Origin: Macrostomum lignano
Lineage: Eukaryota
Reading direction: 5' to 3'
Length of the DNA: 52,947 bases
Assembly: GCA_002269645.1 (NCBI GenBank)
Contig: NIVC01003691.1
Span: 1-52,947 of the forward strand
In this document: piece after piece, positions 1,798 through 52,430 of the stretch
How positions within the stretch are numbered: position 1 is the stretch's first letter
Layout: the number at the start of each line of letters is the position of its first letter
Made by a program: the position numbers and the translations under genes
The notes under the pieces: generated by a model
What the model was told of the DNA's origin: nothing
Seen by the model: only the letters and a program-made list of their open reading frames with translations
Database searches by the model: none

Positions 1798-1924
1798 ACT
1801 GTAATTAAAAATCTTCGCAAAAATATCGAATAGCCGTGTGTTGTGCTAGCGGCTATCGCAAATGTTAAAGTCGCAGTCAGACATAAAAAATTCGTCACAT
1901 TTCAGCCGTCACCAATCGTCTTGC

Positions 1925-4900
1925 ATGGAACTCACCGTGTGGCCTGGCCGATGGGACTCGGCATCCATGGATCCCGACTGCTTAGCCTCTCTCGCCTATG
2001 TCCGCTTCTCCGGCGCCCCGGTGCAAATCCGGCTGCACAACCGGCCAGCTTTGGTCACCTCTGTCACAACTTCGCCGCGCCGCCTGTCTGAGCTGCCCCG
2101 GCTTCGTCATGCTGGCAATTCTATCAACGGCGGCTTCAATCTTGAGCACTTGTTTGCCTATCTACGGAAAGAGAACTATGGTGTTGAGTACGACTTTAGC
2201 GAGGACCAGCTGGTTCGCATGACTGCACTGATGCGATCAACTCGCGCCCGATTGGCGCCCGCTGTTGCTCAATTATTGTGGCTTGAGGCTCGCGTCTATA
2301 CTCGAGTCACTAGGCCGGCCTTTGCTGAGGCTGTTGGCTTGCCAGCCTCCCTAGTGTATCCGGTGTACCGGCATCATGCCACTCGAAACCGGTTGCTAGC
2401 CAGCTTTGGCTACGATTTAGCGCGCGTCAGTGAAGACGCTCTGCTTCAACAGGTTAGAAATTTCTATTGCATCGCCTTGTTTATTACCTACATATACTCA
2501 GCAAAAGTTCCACCCTCCAAATTGCGAAAACTTCACACTCACAATTCAACCCTCAAGTTACGTAACTAAGCCGCCGCGAGGAAGGGAAAGTTGATTGAAT
2601 ATCAATACTCGTAGTAGAATCATAAATTTTTATGCAATATTCAGTTAGAATCGCGATGCGTGTGGGATCCCCTCGCACGCAGAAGTGCGACGACTCTGCG
2701 GGGCATCCCAGGATGAGGCAGCGCAGAAAGTCCTGGGGAAGCTGCTCCGAAGCGTTTTCAATGGCATGACGCAGAGCTCTCCGCAACATTCTATGGTGGA
2801 TTCTCTTTTCGAATGCTACGTTTTAGGAAGTCCCAGACATGCTCGATGGGATTCATGTCTGGGGACCGGGAAGGCCAGCGCAGAGTGCGCAGCTGTAGCT
2901 GTTCCTTCAGTTGACTAACAGCATCGGCTTGGTGTGGGGGGCGTTGTTCCTGGGCTTGGGTCTGCTTAATGTCCAGGCCTGGACCATTAAGCAGACCCAA
3001 GCCACCCCCAAGCGGCAATAAGCTTTGCGCGTGCCGTAGGTTGCGTCACTCGCAATAAGTGAAAAAATCATCTGGCTTAGTGGGGTGGAACATTTGACTG
3101 TTGCAGAGTATATGTAGGAGAGTTCTTAAGCTTGGTTTGGGGGGGGGATCGGCTCAGTGGTGAACTCGTCAGACTCTCGCGCCACTGTCGCGGCTTCGAT
3201 TCAGTGCCTAACCGCATTAATTTTTATGGCTTGAGTTCAATAGATTGGCCGGAGGCTTTTTGTGCGGCTCGCACTCATGTGGGTCATGAAGGCGCAAGGC
3301 ATTACAAAATCAGGGCCTGCTGTACGAGTGTGCGCTTGTATGTGCTCAGGAGTCAGCGGAATGGGTAGAAATGCCTCACCACTGGTTGCAAGACAATGTG
3401 GCTGAAGTTGTTGCGCCAGGGTGCCCGCAGCCCTCCTAAGTTTTGAGTTTCTATTTTTTAGAAAAACATATAGATGCTTACTGCAGAGTGTTGAATTGCA
3501 GGGTTATAAGCAAAACTGCTTAGTCACATATTGCGCATTAATGATTACCCGTTACTTCATGGTTCTATTAAACCTTTTCACGTCCTGTTCGGTTTTTTAT
3601 TCATTCAATTCGGTGCGTGCCCGTCACAAGGACCACTAGAAGAAGAAGGACGGGACACTTCGTTTCTTGGAAAATTTATTAAGGGCTGATTTTCACGGAA
3701 AAATGCACTAGCGAGACAGGAACTTTTCACTTTTTTTCACTTTTAAATGGTGATAGGTTTTTATTGGAAGCAGATACAAAGCTCTTCTTTTGATATAACT
3801 TATAATTCAAAAAACATTTGGCTATAATTATATGCCCAGGTCTAGGCATAGTTAGTATAGCTAAGGTAGCGACATATTTAAATACTTATTTTATATAAAA
3901 AGTATAAAACTAAAATGAATAAGCAGTGAATTGAGCATATAATTATAGCCAACTGTTTTTTTAATGATATATTGCTAATAAATAGATGCATTCGATTAAA
4001 CAGATATTGTAAAATTCAAGTTAGTCACTAGTTAGCTTTAGACTATAATTGCTGCATGATATAGCTAGTAACAAAAATAATATGAAGATCAATTATTCAT
4101 GAAAAAATCTTAATAAAATCCGTCGAAGCAACACGTTTTGTAAGTTATATCAAAAGAAGAGCTTTGTAATCTGCTTCCAATAAAAAGCTATCACCATTTA
4201 AAAGTGAAAAAAAGTGAATGAAAAGTTCCTATCTCGCAAGTGCATTTTTCCGTGAAAATCAGCCTTTAATAAATTTTCCAAGAAACGAAGTGTCCCGTCC
4301 TTCTTCTTCTAGTGGTCCTTGGCCCGTCAGTGCCAGTGTGGCGTGGCAGCGGGGTAAAGATCTGACACAGACTAACCATAAAAAGCCATAGACAACAGAG
4401 ATCAATTTGGTTTTAACCGCGAGCAGCTGGAAGGCATGGCTAAAGCAAGGAATTCTTTAGAAGAAAGCACCAATAGACTGCCAAATGTATTCTCAGCGTC
4501 CTAGAATTGGTTATTTTCAATCGTTCAATAAAAAATACTTTTTTTAATTTGTAGGTGACAGCAAATGGAGTAGATTGCATTGATCAGCTGTCCCAGGTGT
4601 TGGACCAAGCACGCTTTTTTGTGTCCGAGTCTGGGCCCTGCTGCCTTGATGCCATGGTATTTGGCTATCTATGGCCTCTGCTGAAAGCCCCACTAACTCA
4701 GTCCAATCTCAGCTCTGGTGAAGTTCCGGCTCTGTTACGCAAGCTGCGCCAACACCGCAACCTTATAGAATTTTGTCAGCGCATTCAGCGAGTCTACTTT
4801 CCCGAGCTGTCTTCCGCAGTCGGCTCCGCTAGTGCTGCTGGCGGTGATGACGCTTCTTTAAAATCTGGCTCTGATGGCGCTGTGTTGCGAAATGCTGGTC

Positions 4901-4962
4901 TATTTTTGGTCATCACTAGCGCAGTTTTTGGACTTTACGCGTGGCAGTCGGCTGGATTGTAG
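1925..4962 (+). CDS. MTX1: Metaxin-1/3-like mitochondrial outer-membrane SAM-complex protein; join(1925..2452,4555..4962)
   Basis: MELTVWPGRW...DPDCLASLAYVRFSGAP and YLRKENY match the metaxin N-terminus. Exon 2 CLDAMVFGYLWPLLKAPL is the GST-like C-terminal domain, followed by a C-terminal TM helix. Donor CAG|GTTAG at 2453 and acceptor GTAG at 4554 are both phase 0. Confidence 0.9.
2497..3108 (-). mobile_element. Decayed, internally deleted Tc1/mariner element in the metaxin intron
   Basis: Minus strand encodes WPSRSPDMNPIEHVWDFLKR and, after a stop and frameshifts, MPRRVVALLRARGSHT (Tc1 transposase C-terminus). Imperfect TIRs CTCAGCAA..GTTCCACC / GGTGGAAC..TTGCAGAG flanked by TA. Confidence 0.7.
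3139..3435 (+). mobile_element. tRNA-derived SINE, family B
   Basis: A box (GGCTCAGTGG), B-box-like GCTTCGATTC, and body motif CTCAGGAGTCAGCGGAATGGG...GCGCCAGGGTGC shared with the other family B copies. Confidence 0.65.
3627..4321. mobile_element. hAT-type MITE with about 180-bp TIRs
   Basis: TIR CAAGGACCACTAGAAGAAG... at 3627 and its reverse complement ending at 4321. Perfect 8-bp TSD GCCCGTCA at 3619-3626 and 4322-4329. Confidence 0.9.
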
Positions 4963-5697: not shown

Positions 5698-5893
5698 AAA
5701 TATGAATAACAGAAATATGAAACCTACCTAAACTGGAATGTGAAGTCCAAATTCAGGATGTCAGTGACACAAGCTGTGACAAAAAACCTAGACTTTAAAG
5801 TGTGAATGGTATAGGTTCGGCAATCAAACTATGACTCAATGTTATGCTAAGAAAATCTGAATGCCCGCCATGTTTCAGCTGGCAAATGCCAAA

Positions 5894-8800
5894 ATGCATC
5901 TCATTCCTTTGAACTCCGCTAGCCTACAGGAGACAATCGCCACCGAGTCTCAGGGGCATCTTGTCGTGATTATGTTTAGCGCGTCCTGGTGCCAGCCGTG
6001 CAATCGAGCCAAGCCGCTAGTTAACGTTATGGCCTCGTGCCTGTCGGACGTGTCCTTCGGTGTATTAGTGTCGGACGAGAGTCCCGCCAACGAGGCTTGC
6101 GCTATGTCGTTCGACGTCAACGCTTTTCCTACTATCATTCTCTTTCTGGATGGTCAAGAGGTAAATGCATTGTATTTTGGCATAAAATCGCAACTTTGCA
6201 TCAGATAGTAAAAAAATTATTATCATTTTCATTAGTTTTACATGTACAATGATGCTATAAATAAATTGATGAACTACTAGTTCAGTAGTAATAAAGAATT
6301 CGTAAGCTTTTTTTATATAAAAATATAGGCCGTTGGTGTGACTTGCAGACGTAAACTGCTTACTGTTGGGCCCAGCCGTAATGTACATTAGCCAGCGCTT
6401 AATCAGTGAGCAGGGGGGGCGCCCTGATTGCTCCTGAACATGTACAATGACAGCCTTAACAGCGTAGGAACACAGTCACTACGCTCGTATCATTGGTCTA
6501 CAGACATGTGCTTCAGATGAAAAATCCATATCTCGGTCACTTGAACAATTCAATATCAACAGTGTCATAAAGTTACTAATATTTGCCTTGTTTAGCGACA
6601 AACTTAAGCTGCTTTTGAATGAAATTTAAATTGCTACTTTTATCTAAAAGCGATCTAAATACGATCTAATCCTATCTGCAACTTCTGCAACATTTGAAAC
6701 GATTTTGCGACTAATTAAAACATACTAGGTGTGGCGTCAGCGCGGCTTCAACCAGTTAGAACTGATTAACCGTATTCAGCAGCTGAGACCTCAGCTCGAT
6801 GAATGCGTGGCTGCTTTGCTGGAGAATGAGCCAGGGCTGGCCCGGTCTGCCGCTAACATTCTGCTGCGCATAGCGGACAACATCTTGGCGCACCCGATAG
6901 AAGAGAAATATCGCCGATTGAAAGTGTCCAGCAATACCGTGTCAGAGAAGCTGCTGCCAGTGTCTGGCGGCATCGAGTGCCTATTCGCTATGGGCTTCAC
7001 AGACGATGCTGGCGGTAGCAACAATGGCGAGTACTTTGAGCTGGCTCCCGGACCTCTGGTTCGCGTTGCCAAGATACGCAACCAGCTAGTGCGCGTAGTT
7101 ACCGATTCTCGTCATCTGCCCAGTATCTACGTGAACATGATTCCAGCCCTGGCGTCGCCCAAGGCTACCAATCATCAGCTCGTGTTTAGTCTGATGTCTC
7201 ACCTCAGCGGCATGCCAAAATATGAAGATCCCGGCCTGCAGGTAAAGCATATGCTATTTAATGTTTCATGTAGGTTCATTTTTTCATGCTATTTATGGCC
7301 TGCATTGCCTGCTAGCCCGCTTGCTGGGCTGGGAAACGTCCGGCTGGCAAATGGCCGGCTAGGAAATGTCTGGCTGGCAAATGGCCAGCTAGGATACGGT
7401 TGTCTGGCAAATAGCCACCTGGTAAAGGTCTGGCAAATGGCCAGCTAGGATACGGTTGTCTGGCAAATAGCCACCTGGTAAAGGTCTGGCAAATGGCCAG
7501 CTAGGAAACGGTTGTCTGGCAAATAGCCACCTGGTAAAGGTCTGGCAAATGACCAGCTAGGACACGGTTGTCTGGCAAATAGCCACCTGGTAAAGGTCTG
7601 GCAAATGACCAGCTAGGACACGGTTGTCTGGCAAATAGCCACCTGGTAAATGTCTGGCAAATGGCCAGCTAGGACACGGTTGTCTGGCAAATAGCCACCT
7701 GGTAAAGGTCTGGCAAATGGCCAGCTAGGAAACGGTTGTCTGGCAAATAGCCACCTGGTAAAGGTCTGGCAAATGACCAGCTAGGACACGGTTGTCTGGC
7801 AAATAGCCACCTGGTAAAGGTCTGGCAAATGACCAGCTAGGACACGGTTGTCTGGCAAATAGCCACCTGGTAAAGGTCTGGCAAATGACCAGCTAGGACA
7901 CGGTTGTCTGGCAAATAGCCACCTGGTAAAGGTCTGGCAAATGGCCAGCTAGGACACGGTTGTCTGGCAAATGACCAGCTAGGACACGGTTGTCTGGCAA
8001 ATAGCCACCTGGTAAAGGTCTGGCAAATGACCAGCTAGGACACGGTTGTCTGGCAAATAGCCACCTGGTAAAGGTCTGGCAAATGACCAGCTAGGACACG
8101 GTTGTCTGGCAAATAGCCACCTGGTAAAGATCTGGCAAATGACCAGCTAGAAAAATAGGTAGCCAGCTAAGTGTATTTCACTTTGACAGAAAATCTTACC
8201 AATCGGAGTTCGATGTATTTGCAAGGCGGGAGAAAGCGGGAAATGTTTGAGTAAATTTCTGCTCTTTGCTTCTTCCAGTCCCGAGCTCGCGAGTGCATAC
8301 CTTTGACGCGTTTGGAGGAAGCCGCCAGGACGCAGGTGCGCCAGCAGCTGTCAGCTGGCAACAGCGGAGGGTGCCAATTGACTGAGGCGCAAGTCCCAGC
8401 AGCTGAGCGAGATGCACTGCTGTGCGAGTTAACGGCTTGGTTTAAGGTGCGACTCCTGTAATATTTTGTTTTTTATGGTAGTCATTTCTTTTCGAAGTAT
8501 TTATGCAAGAATTTTTAAAAACAGGCATTAAAATTGATTGATTCGGTGAAAAAATGTTTTTTTGAAACAAGATTTTGCCGCTCCCAATATCAAGAACTTG
8601 TGCAGATAAATTAATCTTGTTTCTCCGTCTGAGTTGGTCCGCCTCGACCCCCTTTTTGGTTAGGGGGTGTCTTTTCCATGTTTCCCGTGTTCCTGAGAGT
8701 TGGCCATGCAACTCCTACCACCCAAGTTGGCGCTTTATAGGCTCAGATTTATACTCAAGTTTGCACCAGATCGATGGTCTCCGGCAACGAGCTTTTTCCT

Positions 8801-9148
8801 TGCGCGTTTAATTGCAGCCCAACCGCAGCGATGTTATCATATATGTAATGGCAGGAAGGTTGTGGGCACCCTGGCACAACCGCCTTTGGTGACATTGTCC
8901 CACAGCCAGCGCTGACGGCAATTCTGCCCATTCCGCTGACTCCTGAGCGCATGCAAGCACGGCAGTGCTGTATGCAAGCACGCACTCATACGGAGTGTCA
9001 TCTCTATCCATCCATCTATCTATCTATCTATCTCTATCTATCTATCTATCTATTTATCTATCTATCTATCCATCTATCTATCTATCTATTTATCTATTTA
9101 TCTATTTATCTATCTATCTATCTATCCATCTATCTATCTATCTATCTC

Positions 9149-9202
<54 letters not shown>

Positions 9203-9269
9203 CATCTATCTATCTATCTATCTCTCTATCTATCTATCTATCTATCTATCCATCTATCTATCTATCTAT

Positions 9270-9326
<57 letters not shown>

Positions 9327-9367
9327 CATCTATCTATCTATCTATCTCTCTATCTATCTATCTATCC

Positions 9368-9418
<51 letters not shown>

Positions 9419-12400
9419 CATCTATCCATTCATCCATCCATCCATCCACCTATCTACTATCTATCCTCGTAAACACGCTCACACGGTGTGCACAGCTGCA
9501 CTGACTTCAAATAGTCGAGCATGTACAATTTCATGGCTGTGAATCGCACGTCAACCCTCTGGCCAAATTTTCGTTCATCAGTCCCAGATAAATGTGGCCG
9601 CGCACCGAATAAAATTCGGGGTCTCAGAGTCAGACACTTTTATCGTTGAGCTACCCTGGCCCATTCCACGGCGATATATTCAAAACCGTTTAAACCCATG
9701 TATATTATTGAGTCTCCGTCTAACCCGCAGACTGAGTTCTTCAAGTGGACCAACAGCCCCAAGTGCAGCGTGTGCCATCAGGACTGCCAGTCCAGCAGCA
9801 ACGCCGCCAGCCTGCCGCCTAACGAAGAGGAGCGTCGCTACGGCGCCATTCGGGTCGAATCACACTATTGTCAGCGGTGCCAACGTGTGGAACGATTTCC
9901 GCGCTACAATCATCCAGAGAAGCTGCTGCAAACCCGGCATGGTCGCTGCGGAGAGTGGGCTAATTGCTTTTATTTGCTGTGCCGCGCGCTCAACTTCGAT
10001 ACGCGCTTCACTTATGACGTCACCGACCACGTGTGGGTGGAAGTTTTTAGCGAGCTGGAGCAGCGCTGGCTGCATGTTGATCCGTGCGAAAATCTCATCG
10101 ATGCCCCACTGGTGTACGAGAGCGGCTGGAAGAAGTCGCTTAGTTTTGTATTCGCCATGTCGCATGAAGAACTTGTTGACGTGTCGTGGCGCTATTCAGC
10201 GGAGCACAAGCAGCTGCTGACTAAGCGGCGCGTCAATGAGATCTGGTTGGATCAGGTTGTCGATTGTCTGGAGCGCACCCTTCAGGTTAGGGGGCCAAAT
10301 CATTTTTTAACCATATGCTTTGTGTTGGTTGTTAGCTTGCCAGTCCCATGAGGGCCAGCTCCCAAGCCACAGAGAAAGTCAATGCCACTGTACACCCTGT
10401 GTCCTAAGAGTCCCTTTCTAACCTTGATACGTAATGAGAGGGCGTAGCCCAGTGGTCTAGTGCGGCACTCTGATGTGCTCAATTTCAAGTACAGTCATAT
10501 TACCGGTATTTGGGGGAGGGGGGGGGCTAAATTAGAATCTCGGCTTGACTGCTCGTGCAATTTACGCCCTTGAGAGCCAAGCCCCAAGGCACAGTGAAGT
10601 GTACATGCCTAACGATAAATAAAGTTAGGGCCGCTGTACACTTCTGTGTGAGTGTGTGCCTGTGCGTATGACTGCGTACGTATCCACGCGCTTGTGTGCC
10701 TGCTCAGGGGAGTCGGCGGAATGGGCAGCAATGGCCGGTTGTGACAATGTCGCCTGAAGTGCGCCAGGGTGCACACAGCCCCTTGTCTCTAATACTCGTA
10801 GAAAACCTTGATACGCAACCTTAAAGACAGGAATACCTGCTTGTTTTGCTTTTCACAGTTTATTATATTTCATGTGATCCCCAATGACACAACAGAACGA
10901 TTATCTGCACCTGGGCACCGAACGCAAACGTCTTCTGCGCCTTCGACGCGTTCATGAGATTGTTGAGTTCCTTACGCCGCGTCGACTCGGCGCCAACTCT
11001 GCTGAACTACAGGGCCGTCAGAGCGGCTCCCTTGTTTGGCGCCTGAACCGCGGCGAAACCTCGACCACTGCAGGCTCCAACGATACGTCTAGACACGACT
11101 TCAAGTTTACACCGAATAGCTATGAAGCTGCTGTCGGCAAAATGTGCCTCACCTACGATCCCGTTAAGGATGTCTATCAGCGCGCAGCCGGTAACAATGT
11201 CGATACCATTTCTGGTTGGCATGCCTGCTTAAACCGGTGCAGTAGGCTGGCACGGAAGCTCGAGTCAGACTGGCAGATGGTCTATCTCTGCCGGCCAGAG
11301 GGCTGTCCGTCAGGAACTGATGGCGAGGCTTCCTGGCTGATCGACCTCGCTGGCAGCGGCTTCGTCGTTGGCAAAATCTGTGTAAACGCTGAGGCCAAGA
11401 TTTTTGATGGCTCGGCTAGCGTTCGATGGTCGGTGGAACTTGATGGAAGCCAAGTCGCCGAGTCAAAAGCTGAATGCTTCCGCTTCGAGACTCAGGGTGG
11501 CGGCGCCAAATCTGTGAGAGTCACGGCTCTACTCGCTGGCGGCCAGGGCGACTTGGCATGGCAGAAGTGTCAGTTGTTTCGCCGCTCACTGGACGGGTAC
11601 GGCAATGTGCAATCAAAATCGCCATTTTTGCTTAGTGATAACTAATGTGTAAACTAGGGCAGAGCTATGACTATTAGAAAGTCAGTGCATTTGTACATCC
11701 TGTATGATCGTGTGTATGAGTGCGTGCCTGCGTACAGTATTGGCCTGCTTGCATGTGCTCAGGAGTCAGCGGCACGGACAGAATTACCTTAGCGCTGATC
11801 GTTAGTAAACTATGCCAGAGTTTTTCTACTAAAAAGTAGACGGTAGGGAGAGTGGCGCGATAAGCTTGCTTTGTGGGCAAAGAAATTACGCCATGCGAGA
11901 GCGCTGGAGTATACAACTCGAAGTTTTGTTTAACCTGGCTAATTGAGTCTAGCCTTGGTCTTAGTCTTGGTGTTGACCAGCATCGCCTGGGTTCGATTCC
12001 ACTTTTTGCTTGTTGAGACAAATTTTCTGATAATAAAACACCATCGCAGATCTGGAGGTTCGCCATTCAGTTTCATAGTGGAGCTGCAGCCGGACTCATT
12101 GACTGACGAAAGCGCTTCATCAGCAGTTCCAGCGGCAAAAGCACGGGATGCACGGTCATCAAACACGCCTGCTCCAGCATCTTCATCGTCTGCATCGGGC
12201 AGTGCGTCTGACAATGCTGCATCCAGTCTGAGCACCATCGATCAGTCAGGAAAAGCAGCCAATGTTGATGGCGCTGGCGACAGCGGCCGCGGTGGGTACG
12301 TTATCACGCCAACGGAACGCGAATTAGCCAGCGGTCAGTTGGCCCTGACCTACGACATATTCAGCGATAAGTACACCAGATCTAGCGATGATCATTCGGC

Positions 12401-13133
12401 AACCATCGGTTGGCGCAGTTGCACCTTTTCTACCAGCAACCTGCGCCGCGTTTTAGAGGACAATCCCGGCTGTCCAGGGAGGAAGGTAGTTTTTGAATGG
12501 CAGTTGGCTATGTTTTAAACTAAGTGTATATGTATTTAAGGACTGTGGCCAGTGATATTCTGGTGACTATTCTGTAATCAGCATCGTTGCAAGGCCATGC
12601 TCAGCAGGAAAGGCTATGCAGAACTGAGGCTTGTTTCAACTAGGGACCCCATAGTTGGCGCCTTAGGTACCATGGGCGCCCTTTGCTGTTCAAAATCAAA
12701 AATCCCCACCTATACCTATACCATTGCAATTCACAATTATTCCGTGTAAAAAATCAAGGTTGCCTTTCTTTGCCGCGAACGCGGCGGCTCTGACGAAATC
12801 GGCAGTATTGAATGGCGCGTCGATTTATCCGCTTTGGGCGGCGCCTACCGCCTGGCCAACCTGCGACTTATGCTGTCGCTGGCAGCCAATCACTGCGGAG
12901 TTGTAGTGGAGACCTGCCTGTCAAGCGATACTGGCACCAGCGTCACTGTTCAGGAGAGCTTCTACTCTGGCGAGGTGGCCAACGGCGCCCGCTGGCTGTC
13001 AGTCCGGGCTCAGATTCGCCAGCTGCCAAATGAAACGGGCTCAGATTCTACTTGGGGCCAGCTTTTTCGTGTTGCAGACTCTAGCTGCCCGCTATTGCCG
13101 CTGTCCCTTTCTCTGGACATTGTTAAGGTGTAG
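5894..13133 (+). CDS. NGLY1: Cytosolic peptide:N-glycanase, thioredoxin-PUB-transglutaminase-PAW-PAW, about 1004 aa; join(5894..6160,6729..7241,8279..8446,9731..10285,10896..11596,12050..12485,12759..13133); alternative start at 5861
   Basis: WCQPC thioredoxin; PUB domain ([29 protein letters not shown]); Zn pairs CSVC and CQRC; catalytic triad in [14 protein letters not shown] and WLHVDPCE; two PAW repeats ending ..QLFRR and ..QLFRV. All six introns are GT-AG with matching phases (0,0,0,0,2,0). Confidence 0.92.
7345..8150. repeat. 56-bp minisatellite, about 14 copies, in NGLY1 intron 2
   Basis: Unit CTGGCAAATAGCCACCTGGTAAAGGTCTGGCAAATGACCAGCTAGGACACGGTTGT; period 56 (7404 to 7460). Confidence 0.95.
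8860..9660 (-). mobile_element. SINE family B copy interrupted by a (TATC)n array
   Basis: The reverse complement of 8860-8998 matches the family B 3' body; 9470-9660 matches its 5' half with a degenerate tRNA-like head. Confidence 0.55.
9003..9465. repeat. (TATC)n microsatellite, about 460 bp
   Basis: Read directly; includes CATC and TCTC variant units. Confidence 0.98.
10432..10803 (+). mobile_element. SINE family B copy with 12-bp TSD
   Basis: A box GTAGCCCAGTGG; body nearly identical to 18850-19120; AACCTTGATACG duplicated at 10420-10431 and 10804-10815. Confidence 0.75.
11690..11775 (+). mobile_element. Partial SINE family B fragment
   Basis: GTGTATGAGTGCGTGCCTG...GTGCTCAGGAGTCAGCGG matches the family B body. 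Confidence 0.5.
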
Positions 13134-13262
13134 AAGCTAGATCTTTGTGCAAAAATTGTTCGCATTGTTTTCTTTCCAAACTAGCAGTCACAAGTAGCGA
13201 TATATTTATACTTTTCGATGTGTGAATTCTAACATTCATTTCTCTCTACTAAAGTACGCTTC

Positions 13263-13355
13263 GTAGGGGGCAGAATTGCCTCAGTACTGGTTGTTTCTAT
13301 TCGGGATAAATACGATGTCGCCGAAGGCGTTGCACCCGGGTGCCCGCAATCCTTC
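13263..13355 (+). mobile_element. Partial SINE family B 3' fragment
   Basis: GGGCAGAATTGCCTCAGTACTGGTTG...CCGGGTGCCCGCAATCC resembles 3360-3435. Confidence 0.4.
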
Positions 13356-14661
13356 CGCGAATATTTACTCTTAAAGCATATAGTTTCAATTTTATATCAG
13401 CGGACGTCACGTCCTATAGGCAGGCAACTACAGAGACTTACTAGCGAATGCATGAGTATGCTAGCATGTGGCGTCAGTTCTCGGTTCGATTTTTTCCCCG
13501 AAAAGAAATAATTTTGATCGAAATCTTACGAATAATATGATGATTTGGTTTCCTCATTCGATAGCTGCATGCAGCAATCAGATTTAGAATATGGGTTCTA
13601 ATCTATTCTGATTACAGTCTAGCTGTGTAAATATTTTGAAATTTTAAAGATCGATTAATGAATTTTGTTGGTTTCTATTGTTGCGTATATGGATAAGCAT
13701 TGTTGGTCATAAGTGATTCTGTATCAGTTCTCTTTATTTAGAAATTAAAATTAATAATCATTTCTCATTTTAACCCGACAGTTTTTTTCTTCAGGTTTCA
13801 GGTCTGCTATTACATACTGACTGTGTATGTAATTCTCTTTTTTGTAGCTTCATGTAGGAGCGTGTGTTCGGTCTTGTGACTTTTAATGTCTGTCTACAAG
13901 TGGATCGGAAATGTTGATTCTTTATTACTATAAGAAATTGGTTTTTGATCTCTTCAATTGTGCCAAGCTTGGAAACTGTAAACAATGCTGACACACTTCT
14001 TACGTTGAAATAAATGTATAGTACTTGTTTTTTGTATACTTTCAAATTTCGTGAAAATAACAGTAATTACAGTTTATTCCGACAGACTACAGTAACTTTG
14101 CCTTTTCATTCACTGTATCAGCTCTGTCCCTCTGAAATTTGCAGTCTTATTGATTATTTCACTCTTTAGACTTTCTATTGTGATTAAATTTTTCTCTTGC
14201 ACAAGTCGCATGATTCATTTTTTATCTAATATTCAGATTATCAAGTACTTTGATGCTCTTTAACTGTCTGTGGCGTCTTACAAAATAATAAATAATATTC
14301 TATATGGATTGCTGGCTTTTGAAGCAGAATAAATAGCTTTTATTTCTTATTTTATTTTTGCGATTTTAGAACATGTATATAAGAAGTTAGGAACTATAGT
14401 CTAACTAGTAACTCTACGTAGCTATCTATTCATTAAATTGGTGTGTCATGTCAACTTCATTATCAACTTGTAATGTTTAACATCCAATTTTTCGTTTAGG
14501 CCACTGCAAATCACAGCAAAAACAGATTAAATGTATACTTTATAGTATTGCATTGAAGTTAAAAGAAGTAGAAATACCGGTATCATCAGACAATTTGTGA
14601 CAACAATTTGCTGTTTTGTAAGCTTAGGCACTGTTCAATTGGCACTGTTCAGTTTTTTCAT

Positions 14662-15573
14662 CTAAAAACACGCGGTTACGTATACGGAGTACAGTAGGAA
14701 CAGCAGTGTCAGGTTGATGAGCAGTTTGGCACCCAGGTGCATTGTTTTGCCGATGGCAACTGTTCCACTTCTAGCCAAAGCCAAGACTACTTCATTCGGC
14801 GTTGTCATACTCTGTGGAACACACTTTCCAAGGTTTGCTTTTACTGATGACTTCTGCTCTGGTTCCGCAAAGCAGCATGTTGTAGTTGGTGAATTCTCCG
14901 CTCTTTGAGAATTGCAGTGATAGCTCTTGTACCGGCGCTCGATTGAATTATGCGCTATTGTCCGTTGTGTCGGTTGTTGCTGAAGCAGCAGAAGCAATTG
15001 CTTTAGCAGGTGGCGTAGCTCACGAATGCCGCGGTAGGGTACTGCAGCGCCGTTGCAGATGCTGCTAAGCTCTTGCGCAAACCTGTAAAATCCTGTGCCC
15101 ACTCCGCCACAATCCACACAGTAGACAGATACATTCATACTTGCTAGGACTCGCGCCTCATTGCGCCAGTCCAGGTGATACTTATTGCGTTTGCTGTTTA
15201 GCTCATGTGGCACTGCATCTCCTAGTAGTACCAGCAAACGCGAAACTCCCGGCTGCTTACGCCAGTGCACTTTTGTTGCCGCCTGGTGCAACACCAGCTC
15301 ATAGCACTCCGGGTAATCTTGACCGCAAGTATTAGATGCCTCTTTAAGAAATTTGACGAGCTGGTTGATGCTTTCGGTTGGCTGATATAGTCGCGTCTCG
15401 TACTCGTCACCGTAGTCTCCGTGTAGAATGAGGCCGACTCGTAAATCTGTACCTGCTTTAAATAGACACCGCAAAATTAAACCGAGATCGCGACGAGCTG
15501 CCTCCAGAACGGTGTGCATTGAGGAAGTTGTGTCGAACGAAATTACTAAGTCCACGGCGGACGATGACGTCAT
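14662..15573 (-). CDS. Intronless von Willebrand factor A domain protein (vwkA-like subfamily), about 303 aa; alternative start at 15603
   Basis: DLVISFDTTSSM (MIDAS), VGLILHGDYGD, GQDYPECYELVL, LVLLGDAVPH and DWRNEA are characteristic motifs. The C-terminal about 90 aa is unassigned. Confidence 0.8.
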   Translation of the reverse strand: MTSSSAVDLVISFDTTSSMHTVLEAARRDLGLILRCLFKAGTDLRVGLILHGDYGDEYETRLYQPTESINQLVKFLKEASNTCGQDYPECYELVLHQAATKVHWRKQPGVSRLLVLLGDAVPHELNSKRNKYHLDWRNEARVLASMNVSVYCVDCGGVGTGFYRFAQELSSICNGAAVPYRGIRELRHLLKQLLLLLQQQPTQRTIAHNSIERRYKSYHCNSQRAENSPTTTCCFAEPEQKSSVKANLGKCVPQSMTTPNEVVLALARSGTVAIGKTMHLGAKLLINLTLLFLLYSVYVTACF

Positions 15574-16705
15574 AGGGATTGCTTTTTCTGTATATGTTTG
15601 CAAAAGTTTTTGTTAAGAATCCCAGCGTTTAGTTCTGCCACTTTCTATTTCGTCTATTTTTAAGATGCCGTTGTAGTTTTGATACGGTGGTGCGATGTGG
15701 CACACTTATGCGTGGTATTTATAGCCTCTTCATATACTTCCATCGCGTGCTATGACTCGCGCTTGTCAGTCTCCTTCCTGCCCTCTCTTGCGTGCGTGTG
15801 CAGCCTTCCTATTTCGTATGCATTTCATTTTCCACACACCACCCGCATTCCTCTTCAAAACTGTAGGAGAAGAAAACTAAAGAAATGAAAAGTGGATTGC
15901 TCGTCGCTTGCATTCAAACCTTTGTATTTTCTGTCTTACACTATCTGCCGAAACTAATATCAGTATTTGCCAAAGGCTGGTCTTAGTTATATAGGTTTAA
16001 AAGCGCAGCGTTATGCAGTAATTCTCTATTGCTAATAATAGACTCAAGTTCTGAGTCATCTTAAACAGCTTCTTGCCTGTTTAATTCGGTTTCTGAGCAT
16101 TCTTTGAATTCCATTGCATTCTCAATGAAAATTAACTATGAATTTCAGCTGTTGTGGGGGTGGAGTTTGTTAAAGTTATCTTAGCCGCTGTTCATATCTT
16201 TTAAGGCCATTCATGGCGCTATTCTTTTTGCTGTCTGCTTAGCTACCTAACCCGAACTCTGCCCATCTATATTACCTCAACGAGAAAAGAGTAATTTCAG
16301 AATCCTAAGTTTCGAAGCTTCTATGCTATGATTGAACGTGTAGGCTTTCCATAAATTATTTACTCTCGTACTTTCAAGTGTATCATTTTGGCGGAGTCTT
16401 CAGTATAGAGTACCAGTTAGGCCGAAGATTTGAAGCCGATTTCTCACTTCGAAGCTGGTTTCCAAGCAATATTTCTATGGCCAAAACTGCCATTACCTGT
16501 CTAAATGCGTCAGAAAGCTTTGTACGGCAGTTGCTACATCAAATTTCTAACACCTTGAAAAATGCCGTATCTGATAACCCTTTGACCTTATTGACACTGT
16601 ATGTTATTTTGATCATCTTTTGCGCATTCTTGATTTGCAAACTTGAAAACTGGACTTCATTTTCATTGCATGCACTTTTTACTTGCATGCTAAGATTTGT
16701 AACGC

Positions 16706-18461
16706 ATGACTCAACCGAGTAGCAGTCAAGAAGAGCAGCAGCCTGCAGCTGCGGCGGCTTCTCATCTTCAAACGCATGCTCCTGTGTCCGCCTTCCTGCC
16801 TGGCGGCCAGTTTGCCATGCCACTGTCTGCTTTTGTGCCTGCGGCCACTACAACTGCGCCTTGGTGCAGCGTCCAATATTACGAGTTGAAGACCAAAGTA
16901 GGCGAGAGTTATCACGCTTCTGGGCCGGAGTTCACCATCGATGGGTACACTTGTCCTCTGGCGCCCAATCGATTTTCTGTCGGCGCCCTCAGCAATGTGA
17001 ACCGCTGTCGCGAGGTTGAGAGTGTCCGACGATTGATTGGCCGAGGCGTTCATATTCAACGAAACGCGGATACTGGCGAGGTTTTTCTTACCAACCTGTC
17101 TAATAGTCCGGTGTTCCTTCAGGCCCCGTGCATCAACTACGACAGCAATCCTGGGGTAGTAGTACGATTGGATGTTGGCAGTAAGTTTAATTCGACTTTT
17201 CTTCTCTGAATATATTCAATATTCAATAGTATTATCAAGGACGGCTTTATTAGAAGGACGGAGATCTTCGTTTCTTAGAAAATATTTGGCAGCTGGCTCT
17301 ACGGCTCTACGCTAAAATTTGCTACGGAGACAGGAACAGTCAGACAGGCAGTTTCGCATTAGAAGCGCATCAAAATGCTCAAGAGGCATTTTTCGTTTAG
17401 GACATATGAATGTAAATTAGAATGAGCAATATTTATTCATCTGTTTTTGTGCTGGAATAGTAAAAAGCTTTTTATCTCCATGGAGACAAGACAGCCCCTC
17501 GAAGATTTTCTAAGAAAAGAAATCTCATTATCCTACTCAAACCAATAAGTGCTGATTGAGCATGCTTTTTATGGTTTTGGAGGGCTGATTACTTGATTAA
17601 TTTCAAGTATTTTAAGCCTTAAATCATTGTGTTAGTGTTTCCGTAAATTTTGTGCTCAGTTTTCTATTCAGTGGGATTTATTGAAACCGGCTCTGCACTG
17701 CTTGCAGTCTGTAGCTAAAGCAAATGCTCTCTAATGCTCTCGTAGCTGATAGCTAATGCGTCATCAGTATGCAGTCTCTCTATTAATAAACTAGCACACG
17801 TGTCTTACAAACTCTTGCGGTTTTCTTGGGCTATCCACCTCGGTTTTCTGCACCACTTTTGCCTCTCCTTGTCTGACAGCCTTCTAGCTGTTTTATATTT
17901 AACCTATTGTGACTGTGAGAACGAACTGGCCTTATTGAGCAGAGCCTGTGAAGCTTTGCTTGCTTTTTAATTTATCCGTTTTTACAGCACATATTAAGGT
18001 GATTCTAGCGATTCTTCTGAAGTGAAGTACATGTATGTCCTAGAAATTTACAATTCAATTGCCTGCGAAACAATGAGGACTGCGAATACCTTACTGCAGA
18101 GGATTCAATTATTTAACTCAATAATTCAAGAAGATAGAGACAATAGAAAATATAGCAAATAGTTTAACCCGCCTTTCAACAATTCGCAGGCGACAAGCTG
18201 CTGGTTTTTTCCATGCAAAGCTTTCTTGAAAAAGTGCAACAGCTGCGCGGCCGGTGGCCCCCGCGCGAGGCCCTGAACCGCGCGCAGGCACTGTGCTCCA
18301 TTCGCCTGTCCTTTGTGAAAGGCTGGGGTCATAATTACCAGCTGCAGTGTATCATGTCTACACCATGCCACTGTGAGGTCATCTTCAACGAGGCTTATCG
18401 CGAACTTGACGGCGATCTTACTAATCCTGCTCTCGCTGACATGCCTTCATCAATGTCATAA
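16706..18461 (+). CDS. Smad-family protein with an MH2 domain only and a C-terminal SSMS; join(16706..17180,18190..18461), 248 aa
   Basis: WCSVQYYELKTKVGE, FSVGALSNVNR, IGRGV and CSIRLSFVKGWG..STPC are MH2 hallmarks. Phase-1 intron GTAAGT..GCAG. In-frame TAA at 16700 precedes the ATG. Confidence 0.85.
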
Positions 18462-18774: not shown

Positions 18775-19125
18775 GCATTTGTATAATTTATATAAGCGCG
18801 CACTATCATAGGAGGAGCGGCCCAGGCTCGATTCCAAGTGCAGTCACATTAATTTGGGTCTAAATTAGAATCTCGGTTTGGCTCTGCTCCTGCAGTTAAC
18901 GCCTTTGAAGGCCAAGAGCCCCAAGGCACAGTGAAGTGTGCATGCCTAACGATAAATAAAGTTAGGGCCGCTGTACACTCCTGTGTGTGTGTGCCTGTGC
19001 GTATGACTGCGTACGTATCCGCGCGCTTGTGTGCCTGCTCAGGGGAGTCGTCGGAATGGGCAGTAATGCTTCTCGTCGGTTGTGTAACAGACAATGTCGC
19101 TTAAAGTTCGCCGGGGTGCAACTAG
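18775..19125 (+). mobile_element. SINE family B copy
   Basis: B box GGCTCGATTCC; body highly similar to 10525-10770. Confidence 0.7.
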
Positions 19126-28309: not shown

Positions 28310-29285
28310 TTGGGTTAGGGGTGGTGTACCTGGAGTGAGTTGGAGATCTGGACTGCAGTGTGGCTAGAACGGGACTTGAGCCCCCCGGTCGCACCCGCCC
28401 TGCAGGAAAGACGACCATTCACTAAAGTGTACGGTAGAGCCCAGTTGATGCCAGCCCTGAGGCTGAGCCCGGGTCAGGGTTCAGGTGCTCCTCCCCCAAT
28501 TAAATTCCGGTGGTCACTTTCCAATCTTTGGAGTTATGAGCTCTGCCCTACCTGCCCGGTCCATCCTGCTCTGTCCTTGGTCCATCTGCTGGCTCCTCTG
28601 GTTGTCTCCCTGCTTTTGTGTCTTGGCTCTCATCTCTGACAGTGGATTGGAGTCCTGGGAAGGAAGTTCGTCCGAATCGGGGAAAACCGGCTGAGTCCGG
28701 TTTCCTCTTGCTCCTTGTGCCCCTCCCCCCCCCTTGGCCTGGCCTCCAATATTGAGCTGGATAGGCGATGCCCTTGGGTTGGTAGCAATAGAGGCGTAGC
28801 AATATCCGCCTAGAGTCTCCCCCTCGGATACAAGCCTTCCAGACTCACTCCAAAATAGAGCTGGGTAGTGAAAAGCCTTGAGGCTCGAGTTAACGCTCTT
28901 GGTAAATAGCTGCCCAGACTCTCTCCAATAGTTAGCCCTTTCCAAGACTTCTGGGTTTTCCCGCTCTTGGACGGCTTTTTCAGTAATTCCAATTCTGTTT
29001 TTCGCGCACTCCCAAGGACTTGTCTGCTGGGGGGTGGCCTGGGTGGACTCGGTCCTAGCACCGTCCCTGATTCCACTGTTGGTTTGGCGGTGTCTTGTAC
29101 CGTAGGTTTGGGTCTAACTCGCCCCCCCCCGCGCTTTAAGCCGGGTCCAATCCAATTGCATCCATGGGGTATCTCGGGCCCTGGACAGTTAATGCCTTGG
29201 CCCCTGGAAGTGCCCCTCGCGCAGAGCCCACCCCAGGGCTGATCCGCGGGTCCCCTAGGACCCTTTCGTTTAACAACAACAACAT
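28310..29285 (+). mobile_element. GC-rich interspersed repeat with an (AAC)n tail (retroposon 3' end-like), copy 1
   Basis: About 850 bp colinear with 39012-39845; both end GGGCTGATCCGCGGG..TAACAACAA. Confidence 0.65.
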
Positions 29286-29532: not shown

Positions 29533-30400
29533 TCAAGTATTCTCATCTAGCTGTCAAGCATTCTCATCTAGCTGTCATGTATTCTCATCTAGCTGTCATG
29601 TATTCTCATCTAGCTGTCAAGCATTCATCTAGCTGTCAAGCATTCTCATCTAGCTGTCAAGTATTCTCATCTAGCTGTCAAGTATTCTCATCTAACTGTC
29701 ATGTATTCTCATCTAGCTGTCAAGTATTCTCATCTAACTGTCATGTATTCTCATCTAGCTGTCAACTATCCTCACCTTGCTGTCAAATGTGTCCTCATCT
29801 AGCTTTCAGATGTCCTCATCTAGCTGTCAGATATTCTCATCTAGCTGTCAAATATTCTCATCTAGCTGTCATGTATTCTCATCTAGCTGTCAAGCATTCA
29901 TCTAGCTGTCAAGCATTCTCATCTAGCTGTCAAGTATTCTCATCTAGCTGTCAAGTATTCTCATCTAACTGTCATGTATTCTCATCTAGCTGTCAAGTAT
30001 TCTCATCTAACTGTCATGTATTCTCATCTAGCTGTCAACTATCCTCACCTTGCTGTCAAATGTGTCCTCATCTAGCTTTCAGATGTCCTCATCTAGCTGT
30101 CAGATATTCTCATCTAGCTGTCAAATATTCTCATCTAGCTGTCAAGTATTCTCATCTAGCTGTCAAGTATTCTCATCTAGCTGTCAAGCATTCTCATCTA
30201 GCTGTCAAGTATTCTCATCTAGCTGTCAAGTATTCTCATCTAACTGTCATGTATTCTCATCTAGCTGTCAACTATCCTCACCTTGCTGTCAGATATCCTC
30301 ATCTAGCTTTCAGATGTCCTCATCTATACTAGCTGTCAAGCATTCATCTAGCTGTCAAGCATTCATCTAGCTGTCAACTATTCTCATCTAGCTGTCAGAC
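29533..30400. repeat. 21-bp minisatellite, about 40 units, with a 273-bp higher-order duplication
   Basis: Unit ATTCTCATCTAGCTGTCAAGT; the variant unit GCATTCATCT recurs at 29621 and 29894. Confidence 0.95.
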
Positions 30401-31747: not shown

Positions 31748-32215
31748 GAGATTCAGGATGGGGTAGGGGAGATTCTCAATGGGGTAAGGGAGATTCTAGA
31801 TGGGGTAGGGGAGTTTCAAAATGGGGTAAGGGAGATTCTAGATGGGGTAAGGGAGATTCTAGATGGGGTAGGGGAGATTCTAGATGGGTAGGGGAGATTC
31901 TAGATGGGTAGGGGATATTCTGAATGGGATATTGGAGATTCTGAATGGGATATTGGAGATTCTGAATGGGATATTGGAGATTCTGAATGGGATATTGAAG
32001 ATTCTGAATGGGATATCGGAGATTCTGAATGGGATAGGGGAGATTCTGAATGGGATATTGGAGATTCTGAATGGGATAGTGGAGATTCTGAATGGGATAG
32101 TGGAGATTCTGAATGGGATATTGGAGATTCTGAATGGGATATTGGAGATTCTGAATGGGATAGGAGAGACTGATTGTGATAGGGGAGATTCTGTAAGGGA
32201 TAGTGGAGATTCCAG
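31748..32215. repeat. 21-bp minisatellite with two unit variants
   Basis: GGAGATTCTAGATGGGGTAAG units switch to GGAGATTCTGAATGGGATATT near 31915. Confidence 0.95.
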
Positions 32216-33093
32216 GGAAAGGGGTAAGAGTATGAAATGAGGAAATTACAAAAACAGGAACAGGGAGAATGCAAGTTATTTAGCCCGTCAGTCAAAAGCA
32301 AATTGCAAGCATCATCAAAAGTCATAACAGTGCAGATGAAACAACAACCAGCTTATTTTATTGACATCTCTTATGAACACGAACTCAATGAATAGTTATG
32401 TATTCAATGCAAACGTCAAAACACATTTCTTATTCCCAAAAGCAAAAAAGCCTGCAACGAAGATGGTTATAGTAGAAATAGCATTAATCTAAAATGTACA
32501 CGCAAGCAGTCTGTAATCAAACAAAGAATTATTGATTCATCAAGTAATTATTAAAAGATCTTAATCCATGCTGATTACATTCTGACATCATCGATATATA
32601 TGAAGCGATTAGCAAAAGTTAATTAATCAACAGGAGAATTAAAATATGCACTGTGATTATCAGCTTAAAATAAAAAGCGAATTACATAAGTTGTTAAGCA
32701 ACAAGTCTGGCACAAAGAGGCACTTCCTACTTACTAGAAACAAAAGTAGTATGAATGGAAAATATGAGTCTAGGTCATTAGCGTTTTATAGGTTGCATAG
32801 GAAGTAAGCGAGCTGATGAACAGAAACATTCAAATTTTAAGTGCAAAACCTGTTTGAATCGGCTAAAAACAAAATTTTATGGGAAAATGAATAAAAACTA
32901 CTAAAAATACTAATTAGTAGGCAGATAAGGGTAAAACATGCGAAATTATCAGAAAAGCAAATCAATAAAACATTTTTCACGGGCATGCAGACATTATATT
33001 TCTGATTTCCGATTACTGATCCATTTCTAATTTTAAATGGACAAAAAAATTAATGCCGCAATTTATAGTGATTAAAATATCATTACTGGTTAA

Positions 33094-39011: not shown

Positions 39012-39845
39012 TAGGAAATACGACCATTCACAAAGGTGTACGGTAGAGCCCAGTTGATGCCAGCCCTGAGGCTGAGCCCCAGGTTAGGGTTCAGGTGCTC
39101 CTCCCCCCAATTAAATTCCTGTGTAGGCGCTTCCAATTATTGGAGTTATGAGCTCTGCCCTCCTTGCCTGGTCCATCTTGCTCTGTCCTTGGTCCATCTG
39201 CTGTCTCCTCTGGCTGTCTCCCTGCCCTTGTGTCTCGGCTCTCATCCTGACAGTGGACTGGAGTCCTGGGGTTGATGTTCGTCTCAAATCGGGGATACCG
39301 GCTGAGTCCGGGTCCTCTTGCTCCTCTTGTGCCCCTTCCCGACCCCTTGGCCCGGCCTCCAATATTGAGCTGGATAGGTGATACCCTTGGGCTTGCAGCC
39401 CTGTAGGTAGGTAGTCCTGATCCTGCCTGACAGGAGACTCGCCCTCGGAAACAAGCCTTCCAGACTCGCTCCAAAATTAAGCCATTAATTCCGAGACTTC
39501 AGGGTCTCCCTGCTCTCGGACCGCTTTTCAGTAGTAACCCAAGTATTTTTCAATCCAATTTATTTTTTCGCGCACTCCCGGGATTTGTCTGCTGGGTGGT
39601 GGCTTGGGTGGACTCGGTCCTTGCACCGTCCCTGATTCCACAAATTGGGTTGGCGGTGTCTTAGTCCAAAGGCTTGGGTTAGTAGCCCCAAATTCTCACC
39701 AGGCCTCGAGACCTGGTCCCAAGCGTGGCCTCTCGGGCTATATTATATGCCCCTGGTAGTATGGCCCACAGACAGTCCAGCGGCAGAGCCCTACTTGGGC
39801 TGATCCGCGGGGCCCCTGGCTTCCCATCCTCGTATAACAACAAAG
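39012..39845 (+). mobile_element. GC-rich interspersed repeat with an (AAC)n tail, copy 2 (5'-shorter)
   Basis: Colinear with 28400-29285. Confidence 0.65.
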
Positions 39846-46337: not shown

Positions 46338-52065
<5,728 letters not shown>

Positions 52066-52430
52066 CTTTGGGATTGGAGGAAACGAAATGTGGAAGTAGT
52101 TACTGAGAACCTCTTCACTCGATACGATTAACTTAATCTCTTCTTTCTGAACATCTGCATGTATCTGTTGACAGTAGAACTAGCTCGTACCAAGAATAGA
52201 GCAACTCAGGCTCACGAAATTCCAGAACACGGGCTAACTTGTTTGTTGGCCAGCTTCTCAAAAACGAATCAAGTCGCCATCATGCTGGAACAATTCAACA
52301 ATTCTGAAGGAATGCCTGACGGAATGATGACGGAATGCTTGAGGGACTAGTTGATGATGCCAGAAGTTGAGGCTGGATCAGCGAAACTCGAGAAATTCGC
52401 ATCAGGGTGTCTATAATCACCTGCACAGGG

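What the first reader, a model, noticed from the sequence alone, without database searches (positions are those of the whole stretch)
16706..18461. R-Smad-like protein apparently lacking the MH1 DNA-binding domain
Seen: only about 52 aa of Q/A/P-rich sequence precede MH2. An in-frame stop lies just before the ATG, and the divergent vWA gene starts 1.1 kb upstream with no MH1-like ORF in between. The receptor-phosphorylation motif SSMS is intact. Established: C. elegans DAF-14 is an MH1-less R-Smad. Inference: this may be an independently evolved decoy or adaptor Smad in TGF-beta signalling.
Basis: partly seen in the sequence, partly recalled or inferred. Interest (0 to 1): 0.7.

Follow-up and report, generated by a model that had tools for sequence, protein, structure and literature searches.

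The report
Smad signalling gene without DNA-binding domain
This animal genome window holds an intact two-exon gene for a short Smad2/3-like TGF-beta signalling protein that has the partner-binding half and the receptor phosphorylation tail but no DNA-binding half, an architecture already known from a nematode, a tapeworm and an annelid.

Summary
Window 16706..18461 (+) encodes a two-exon, 248-aa protein: exon 1 16706..17180, a 1009-nt GT-AG intron, exon 2 18190..18461. A complete MH2 domain (Pfam E=1.5e-44) is preceded by only 51 A/Q/P/S-rich residues, and the protein ends in SSMS.

No MH1 coding potential exists anywhere in the 53-kb window by tblastn, a custom MH1 profile or Pfam. A TAA sits two codons before the ATG. 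GC jumps from about 0.34 to about 0.58 exactly at the ATG.

The single intron lies at the ancestral Smad MH2 position and phase, so this is a 5'-truncated genomic Smad gene, not a retrocopy. The protein is nearest to Smad2/3 (44-46% identity) but sits on a long, unresolved branch with no close orthologue.

Both pocket arginines (Smad2 R427/R428) are Q and L, and a Trp invariant in 108 of 108 relatives is His. The intact SSMS therefore does not guarantee canonical receptor coupling.

MH1-less R-Smads are already described (DAF-14, EmSmadA/EmSmadC, Capitella Smad1/5/8), so this is a new member of a known kind. Any decoy or adaptor role is untested. The source organism could not be identified.

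The parts
16706..17180 (+). Exon 1 (475 nt): start codon, 51-aa low-complexity N-terminus, and MH2 residues 52-158 plus the first base of codon 159
   Evidence: ORF and splice donor read directly. tblastn MH2 hit 16868-17179, E~5e-25. GC 0.55 against 0.39 upstream.
16706..16858 (+). N-terminal 51 codons, A/Q/P/S/T-rich, no MH1, no PPxY or Ser/Thr-Pro linker motifs, predicted disordered
   Evidence: Composition. AlphaFold pLDDT <50 for residues 1-49. No Pfam domain.
16700..16702 (+). In-frame TAA stop two codons upstream of the ATG
17181..18189 (+). Intron (1009 nt, GTAAGT...CAG, phase 1) at the ancestral Smad MH2 intron position
   Evidence: Frame is restored only by this splice. GC is 0.37. 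A phase-1 intron lies at the same place within one codon in Oppia nitens Smad2/3 and Tetranychus Smad2-like.
18190..18461 (+). Exon 2 (272 nt): rest of MH2, C-terminal tail, stop codon
   Evidence: tblastn MH2 hit 18189-18458, E~2e-11. Translation.
18321..18371 (+). L3 loop codons (GWGHNYQLQCIMSTPCH). Q209 and L210 replace Smad2 R427 and R428; H219 replaces the invariant Trp
   Evidence: Alignment against 108 MH2 domains. Low model confidence for residues 203-214.
18447..18458 (+). C-terminal SSMS codons (R-Smad receptor phosphorylation motif)
   Evidence: Read directly. Aligns to the SSxS of R-Smads.
18955..18960 (+). First AATAAA downstream of the stop; candidate polyadenylation signal (about 0.5 kb 3'UTR)
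   Evidence: Pattern match only; inference.
15604..16705 (.). 1.1-kb AT-rich spacer between the divergent vWA-like ORF and the Smad ATG; presumed shared promoter region and 5'UTR, with no coding similarity
   Evidence: GC 0.39. No MH1 or any Pfam hit in + frames.
14662..15573 (-). Divergently oriented neighbouring ORF, weakly vWA-like (context, not part of the Smad gene)
   Evidence: Pfam VWA_4 E=0.004, below the cut-off. No PDB sequence match.

Best explanation
This is a real, selectively maintained gene for an MH2-only, R-Smad-type protein. It derives from an intron-containing Smad2/3-like ancestor that lost the MH1 and linker exons.

Shown:
- A complete MH2 fold and an intact SSMS tail.
- Conserved trimer-interface residues (D79, R89, D232).
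- An ancestral intron retained at its original position.
- No MH1 in the window.

Inferred:
- The protein cannot bind DNA itself.
- If a type I receptor phosphorylates its tail, it would enter Smad oligomers by inserting that tail into the L3 pocket of a partner (a co-Smad or another R-Smad).
- Its own pocket has lost both arginines, so it should be a poor acceptor of a partner's phospho-tail. Its coupling to receptor and membrane is probably altered.
- It would therefore act as a modulator of Smad complexes, like DAF-14 or EmSmadA/EmSmadC, rather than as an autonomous transcription factor. Whether it activates or inhibits is unknown.
For: - Domain and fold: Pfam MH2 E=1.5e-44, full length. 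PDB sequence matches are Smad2/3 at 1e-39 to 1e-40, ahead of Smad1, Smad4 and Smad7. AlphaFold gives a confident MH2 core and a disordered N-terminus. Foldseek target-normalised TM-score is 0.81-0.87 to Smad2/3 MH2.
- Intact gene: the 747-nt ORF is open with canonical GT-AG splicing. Exon GC is 0.54-0.55, like neighbouring coding exons at 0.51-0.55, against 0.37-0.39 for intron and flanks, with a sharp step at the ATG.
- No MH1.
- 5' acceptors: the acceptor-like AG at 16693/4 runs into stops in all three frames, read directly from the sequence printed. No pyrimidine-rich acceptor lies in 16710-16750.
- Ancestral intron: phase-1 intron at the same site as in mite Smad2/3 genes.
- Key residues mapped. 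The role of Smad2 W422/Y426/R427/R428 as a cationic pocket is from PMC8567202.
- Precedents for functional MH1-less R-Smads: PMC4711336, PMC10073696, PMC7522025.
Against: - There is no transcript, orthologue or expression evidence. No protein above 46% identity exists in either protein library.
- An MH1 exon more than 16.7 kb upstream, or lost through misassembly, cannot be excluded.
- A phase-0 acceptor-like site exists at 16809/10.
- Loss of an otherwise invariant Trp and of the pocket Arg, together with the long branch, could also mean relaxed constraint.
- Receptor phosphorylation and partner binding are untested.
Confidence: 0.6

Rival explanations
1. Gene-model artefact. The true gene is a canonical MH1-linker-MH2 Smad whose 5' exons lie outside the window or are missing from the assembly. 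The ATG at 16706 would then be internal or an alternative-promoter start.
For: - Only 16.7 kb of upstream sequence is available.
- A pyrimidine-rich AG at 16809/10 would join in phase 0.
- Vertebrate Smad2/3 genes produce annotated MH2-only isoforms of 224-230 aa, for example P0043 and P0050.
Against: - Metaxin, thioredoxin, PNGase and the opposite-strand vWA-like ORF fill the upstream 16 kb. An MH1 exon would have to skip all of them.
- The in-frame TAA and the GC step at the ATG.
- Segment 16706-16810 has exon-like GC of 0.57-0.62.
- No MH1 is detectable in 53 kb.
- The linker motifs are absent as well, and the MH2 itself is non-canonical.
Confidence: 0.15
2. Decaying partial duplicate. This would be a 5'-truncated Smad paralogue that is no longer functional, or only recently inactivated.
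For: - R428-equivalent to Leu (Arg in 98 of 108 relatives) and Trp to His (Trp in 108 of 108).
- Long terminal branch of 0.65 against a median of 0.19.
- No orthologue found.
- The L3 loop is modelled with low confidence.
Against: - 248 codons are open after more than 50% amino-acid divergence from any Smad, with both splice sites canonical.
- 48 alignment columns invariant across 41 sequences include the query.
- Only 10 of the columns conserved at 85% or more differ, and 8 of those changes are conservative.
- Exon composition is still sharply distinct from the flanks.
Confidence: 0.15
3. A dedicated inhibitory or decoy Smad. It would occupy receptors or co-Smad without producing transcriptional output, acting as a natural dominant negative.
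For: - No DNA-binding domain is present.
- The tail and trimer interface are kept while the protein's own acceptor pocket is neutralised.
- PMC7522025 describes DAF-14 as an MH2-only inhibitory Smad and suggests a dominant-negative role for the MH1-less Capitella Smad1/5/8.
Against: - The altered L3 loop (Q209, L210, C212) argues against efficient receptor docking (PMC8567202, on R427A/R428A).
- MH2-only EmSmadA/EmSmadC behave as receptor-phosphorylated AR-Smads rather than inhibitors (PMC10073696).
- No functional data exist here.
Confidence: 0.1

Closest known systems
Smad2/Smad3 (AR-Smads), MH2 domain
   Same: - Best sequence match (139 bits, 44-46% identity) and best structural match.
- SSMS tail identical to Smad2.
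- Trimer-interface Asp/Arg/Asp conserved.
- Shares the phase-1 intron in the KIPPG-C loop.
   Different: - No MH1 and no linker (no PPxY or SP sites).
- L3 loop is YQLQCIM instead of YRRQTVT, so both arginines and the subtype Thr are lost.
- The equivalents of Smad2 W368 and W448 are absent or changed.
- The invariant Trp (W437) is His.
Echinococcus multilocularis EmSmadA / EmSmadC
   Same: MH1-less AR-type R-Smads with a C-terminal SXS motif. They are phosphorylated by TGF-beta/activin-type receptors (PMC4711336 table 2; PMC10073696).
   Different: Orthology was not tested, because their sequences were not at hand. Nothing above 46% identity turned up in the searches of the two protein libraries, the larger of which covers about 15 billion proteins, so the window gene is not a close relative of anything found there. 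The state of their L3 pocket was not compared.
Caenorhabditis elegans DAF-14
   Same: A Smad with only a well-conserved MH2 and very fast evolution; it is thought to derive from the TGF-beta R-Smad (PMC7522025; PMC2657120).
   Different: No specific affinity to nematode MH2-only proteins appeared in the distance tree. Nematode examples in the hit list (P0214, P0227) keep the pocket Arg.
Capitella teleta Smad1/5/8
   Same: An R-Smad whose genomic and transcript data show an ATG just 5' of MH2 and no MH1 (PMC7522025).
   Different: That protein is BMP-type. The window protein scores higher against AR-Smads and has neither L3 signature.

Membership tests
Smad family (MH2-containing) | Complete MH2 domain | tested here: met
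   PF03166 E=1.5e-44, profile positions 2-174 of 174. Foldseek target-normalised TM-score 0.81-0.87 to Smad2/3 MH2.
Smad family (canonical architecture) | N-terminal MH1 DNA-binding domain | tested here: not met
   No MH1 in the protein or anywhere in the 53-kb window. Exons beyond the window are not testable.
R-Smad | C-terminal SSXS receptor phosphorylation motif | tested here: met
   The protein ends ...PSSMS, and S245/S246/S248 align to Smad3 S422/S423/S425.
R-Smad | L3-loop basic pocket (Smad2 Y426, R427, R428, plus the B8 Lys) | tested here: not met
   Y208 is kept and Lys is Arg (R154), but R427 is Q209 and R428 is L210. The second position is Arg in 98 of 108 relatives.
R-Smad | Actual phosphorylation by a type I receptor and complex formation with a co-Smad | not testable with these tools
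   Needs biochemical assays.
R-Smad / Smad oligomers | Trimer-interface residues (Smad3 D258, R268, D408) | tested here: met
   D79, R89 and D232 are conserved. The residue roles are from memory of the Smad structural literature.
AR-Smad (Smad2/3 subfamily) | L3 subtype residues Arg427 and Thr430 (Smad2 numbering) | tested here: not met
   Q209 and C212. This is also not the BMP-type His/Asp signature.
AR-Smad (Smad2/3 subfamily) | Phylogenetic placement inside the Smad2/3 clade | tested here: inconclusive
   The smallest distances are to Smad2/3, but neighbour-joining places it as a long basal branch next to other long branches. No maximum-likelihood tree was possible.
I-Smad (Smad6/7) | No SSXS tail; closest similarity to Smad6/7 MH2 | tested here: not met
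   It has SSMS. Smad7 scores only 75 bits against 139 for Smad2.
Co-Smad (Smad4) | No SSXS; Smad4-type MH2 with an insert | tested here: not met
   It has SSMS. Smad4 matches at 102 bits in two broken stretches.
MH1-less R-Smads (DAF-14, EmSmadA/C, Ct-Smad1/5/8), an architectural class | Start codon shortly 5' of MH2, no MH1, SSXS-type tail | tested here: met
   at genomic level only; transcript confirmation is lacking.
MH1-less R-Smads, orthology to any described member | Shared descent with DAF-14 or EmSmadA/C | not tested
   Reference sequences were not retrievable by name. No close relative exists in the libraries.

The most novel reading that the evidence does not exclude
An AR-Smad-derived, MH2-only protein that keeps its phosphorylatable tail and trimer interface but has neutralised its own phosphoserine/PIP2 pocket. 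It would be a one-way 'tail donor' that can occupy only one position in a Smad heterotrimer. That would make it a new, independently evolved class of Smad-complex modulator in an unsampled animal lineage.
Probability: 0.12. Interest if true: 0.55.

Novelty: new member of a known kind. Interest (0 to 1): 0.3.

Why it matters
This would add another independent case of an animal lineage discarding the Smad DNA-binding domain while keeping the receptor-regulated tail. It supports the view that MH2-only R-Smads are a recurrent evolutionary solution rather than curiosities of nematodes and tapeworms. The simultaneous loss of the two L3-pocket arginines is a natural experiment on which MH2 surfaces are needed once DNA binding is gone. 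The gain is incremental: the architecture is already published in at least three phyla, and nothing here bears on a long-standing open question.

Tried and rejected
- Organism identification failed. The Smad query, the PNGase core (best 55-56% identity, unnamed) and the PAW domain (no hits) gave no close relative. Rfam and tRNA scans were empty. Cluster look-ups of short MH2 proteins gave scattered nematode, trematode and unnamed metagenome entries.
- The neighbour-joining tree did not resolve placement, showing long-branch behaviour.
- A PDB sequence search of the vWA-like neighbour found nothing.
- Retrocopy origin was rejected because the gene keeps an ancestral intron.
- I-Smad or co-Smad identity was rejected because of the SSMS tail and lower scores.
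- One script call returned no answer and was rerun.

Full report
**Observation**

The window is eukaryotic (metazoan) DNA of 42% GC with long microsatellite arrays. At 16706 an ATG opens a reading frame that runs to a canonical donor (CA|GTAAGT) after 17180. An acceptor (ttcgcag|) before 18190 restores the frame, and the CDS ends at TAA 18459-18461. The spliced CDS is 747 nt and encodes 248 aa.

Pfam finds one complete MH2 domain: PF03166, E=1.5e-44, profile positions 2-174 of 174, residues 52-225. The 51 residues before it are rich in A, Q, P, S and T, and AlphaFold models them as disordered (pLDDT <50 for residues 1-49). The protein ends in PSSMS. A TAA lies two codons upstream of the ATG.

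The nearest upstream ORF is on the opposite strand (14662..15603, first ATG at 15573), 1.13 kb away. It is only weakly vWA-like (no PDB match).

**Is MH1 really missing?**

Three searches were run:
- tblastn with the MH1 domains of two canonical Smad2/3 proteins against the whole window. The best E was 0.17, at an unrelated downstream site. The MH2 parts of the same proteins hit only 16868-17179 and 18189-18458.
- A profile built from 104 MH1 domains, run with all heuristics off against 2447 six-frame ORF pieces. The best E was 2, at 5.5 bits.
- Pfam on the three plus-strand frames of 12519-16858 with stops masked. No MH1 appeared even at E<=10.

The upstream 16 kb is occupied by other genes: metaxin (Tom37 plus GST_C_6), a thioredoxin ORF, a PNGase (PUB, transglutaminase core, PAW) and the opposite-strand vWA-like ORF. 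A hidden MH1 exon would have to skip all of them.

GC content steps from 0.33-0.35 to 0.57-0.62 exactly at 16706. Both exons are 0.54-0.55, like neighbouring coding exons, and the intron is 0.37.

Only two pyrimidine-rich AG sites lie near the 5' end:
- The site at 16693/4 meets stop codons in all three frames before MH2 (read directly from the sequence).
- The site at 16809/10 would join in phase 0, but it lies in exon-like sequence.

An exon beyond the window or an assembly gap remains formally possible.

**Origin**

The single intron interrupts ...RLDVG|S|DKLLVF in phase 1. I mapped two mite Smad genes exon by exon:
- Canonical MH1+MH2 Smad2/3 of Oppia nitens (P0017 on L003). It has a phase-1 intron in KIPP|G|CNLKIF.
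- The Smad2-like gene of Tetranychus urticae (P0118 on L001). It has a phase-1 intron in KIPP|R|CNLKIF.

This is the same loop, the same phase and the same position within one codon; the loop carries a one-residue indel, so the exact register is ambiguous. From memory, human SMAD3 exon 7 also ends in phase 1 at this Gly codon; that was not checked here.

The window gene therefore keeps an ancestral Smad intron. It is a 5'-truncated genomic derivative, not a processed retrocopy. The other MH2 intron seen in Oppia (RRHI|GRGV) is absent.

**What kind of Smad**

Against PDB sequences the order is Smad2/3 (139 bits), Smad1 (126), Mad (117), Smad4 (102) and Smad7 (75). Foldseek places the model on Smad2/3 MH2 with target-normalised TM-scores of 0.81-0.87.

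Both large protein searches found nothing above 46% identity, and the top hits are ordinary Smad2/3. A distance tree on 108 diverse MH2 domains gives a long terminal branch (0.65 against a median of 0.19). It sits near the base beside other long branches, so placement is unresolved.

Of the columns conserved at 85% or more in those 108 sequences, the query differs at ten. Eight changes are conservative. The two radical ones are:
- L210, where 98 of 108 have Arg (Smad2 R428, Smad3 R386, Smad4 R515).
- H219, where all 108 have Trp.

The neighbouring subtype-determining residues are Q209 (Smad2 R427) and C212 (Smad2 T430), which is neither the activin/TGF-beta nor the BMP signature. Smad2 W368 has no counterpart and W448 is Glu. 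In contrast the trimer-interface residues D79, R89 and D232, the pocket Tyr (Y208) and the B8 basic residue (R154) are kept. AlphaFold is confident for the MH2 core but not for the L3 loop, residues 203-214.

**Mechanism (inference)**

PMC8567202 shows that Smad2 W422, Y426, R427 and R428 form a cationic pocket. The R427A/R428A mutant lowers binding to PI(4,5)P2 membranes three- to five-fold and halves affinity for the phosphorylated GS peptide of the type I receptor. The same L3 pocket receives the phosphorylated tail of the neighbouring subunit in Smad trimers, according to the structural literature cited there and the PDB entries 1khx, 1u7f and 1g88 listed.

The window protein can therefore plausibly donate a phosphorylated SSMS tail to a partner's pocket and pack through the conserved interface. 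It should accept a partner's tail poorly, should couple to receptor and membrane non-canonically, and cannot bind DNA. The most likely role is as a modulator or co-factor inside Smad complexes. The direction of that effect, positive or inhibitory, is open.

The intact 248-codon ORF after more than 50% amino-acid divergence, the preserved splice sites and the exon-like composition argue against a dead relic. The two radical substitutions and the lack of orthologues keep that rival alive.

**Comparison with known cases**

MH1-less R-Smads are documented in three phyla:
- C. elegans DAF-14 has only MH2 (PMC7522025, citing Inoue and Thomas 2000) and evolves extremely fast (PMC2657120).
- Echinococcus EmSmadA and EmSmadC lack MH1 (PMC4711336 table 2). 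They are phosphorylated by TGF-beta/activin-type receptors (PMC10073696).
- Capitella teleta Smad1/5/8 has an ATG immediately 5' of MH2 and no MH1 in genome or transcripts (PMC7522025).

In passing I found that the spider-mite Smad2-like proteins (P0118 at 305 aa, P0120 at 306 aa) are also MH2-only. A transcript assembly for P0118 carries in-frame stops upstream of its ATG.

The window gene fits this architectural class. Orthology to any member could not be tested.

**Verdict**

This is a new member of a known kind, with a degenerate L3 pocket as its distinguishing detail. The source organism could not be identified with the available collections, which limits any claim of independent origin. 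Interest is modest.

Noticed in passing
window 5861-12518 (+): A PNGase locus with unusual domain content. A thioredoxin ORF (5861-6208) sits directly upstream of a PUB domain (6729-7448), a transglutaminase/Rad4 core (9698-10351), a full PAW domain (10884-11645) and a second, partial PAW match (11943-12518). From memory, nematode PNG-1 carries thioredoxin instead of PUB. It was not determined whether these ORFs form one gene or two.
   Followed up: partly
window 1862-2569 and 4555-4962 (+): A metaxin-like gene: Tom37/GST_N_4 in one exon and GST_C_6 in another, about 2 kb apart.
   Followed up: partly
window 48951-52118 and 8951-9504: Very long (ATAG/TATC)n-type microsatellite arrays that read as 'SIYLSIYL...' ORFs of up to 1055 aa. 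GC skew is +0.77 in 50-52 kb. The shorter array lies inside the PNGase locus.
   Followed up: no
window 28514-28945 (-) and 39091-39474 (-): Two ORFs share a motif (…SPIQLNIGG[QR]AKG…GARG…), suggesting copies of a dispersed repeat or transposon.
   Followed up: no
window 41053-41436 and 41771-42331 (+): An ORF with a weak HTH_32 (transposase-like) match (E=7.8e-4, 20.4 bits, below the curated cut-off of 33.7) next to an ORF with a near-threshold QRICH1-domain match (E=6.3e-7, 29.9 bits vs cut-off 30.8). This is probably a mobile-element remnant.
   Followed up: partly
window 29577-30332, 31884-32325, 46769-47476, 47760-48445: Several tandem-repeat blocks create long spurious ORFs on both strands.
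   Followed up: no
L001 2001-3782; L002 167-1084 (Tetranychus urticae): The annotated spider-mite 'Smad2' (P0118, 305 aa; Panonychus P0120, 306 aa) has MH2 only, with an acidic N-terminus of about 107 aa. The transcript contig has several in-frame stops upstream of the ATG. This is another apparent MH1-less AR-Smad, but with a fully canonical L3 loop.
   Followed up: partly
proteins P0243, P0287-P0292 (metagenome/NCBI, 262-265 aa): A family of MH2-domain proteins with a hydrophobic, transmembrane-like N-terminus, no SSXS tail, and Ile at the pocket-Arg position (GWGTEFRIQEV...).
   Followed up: no
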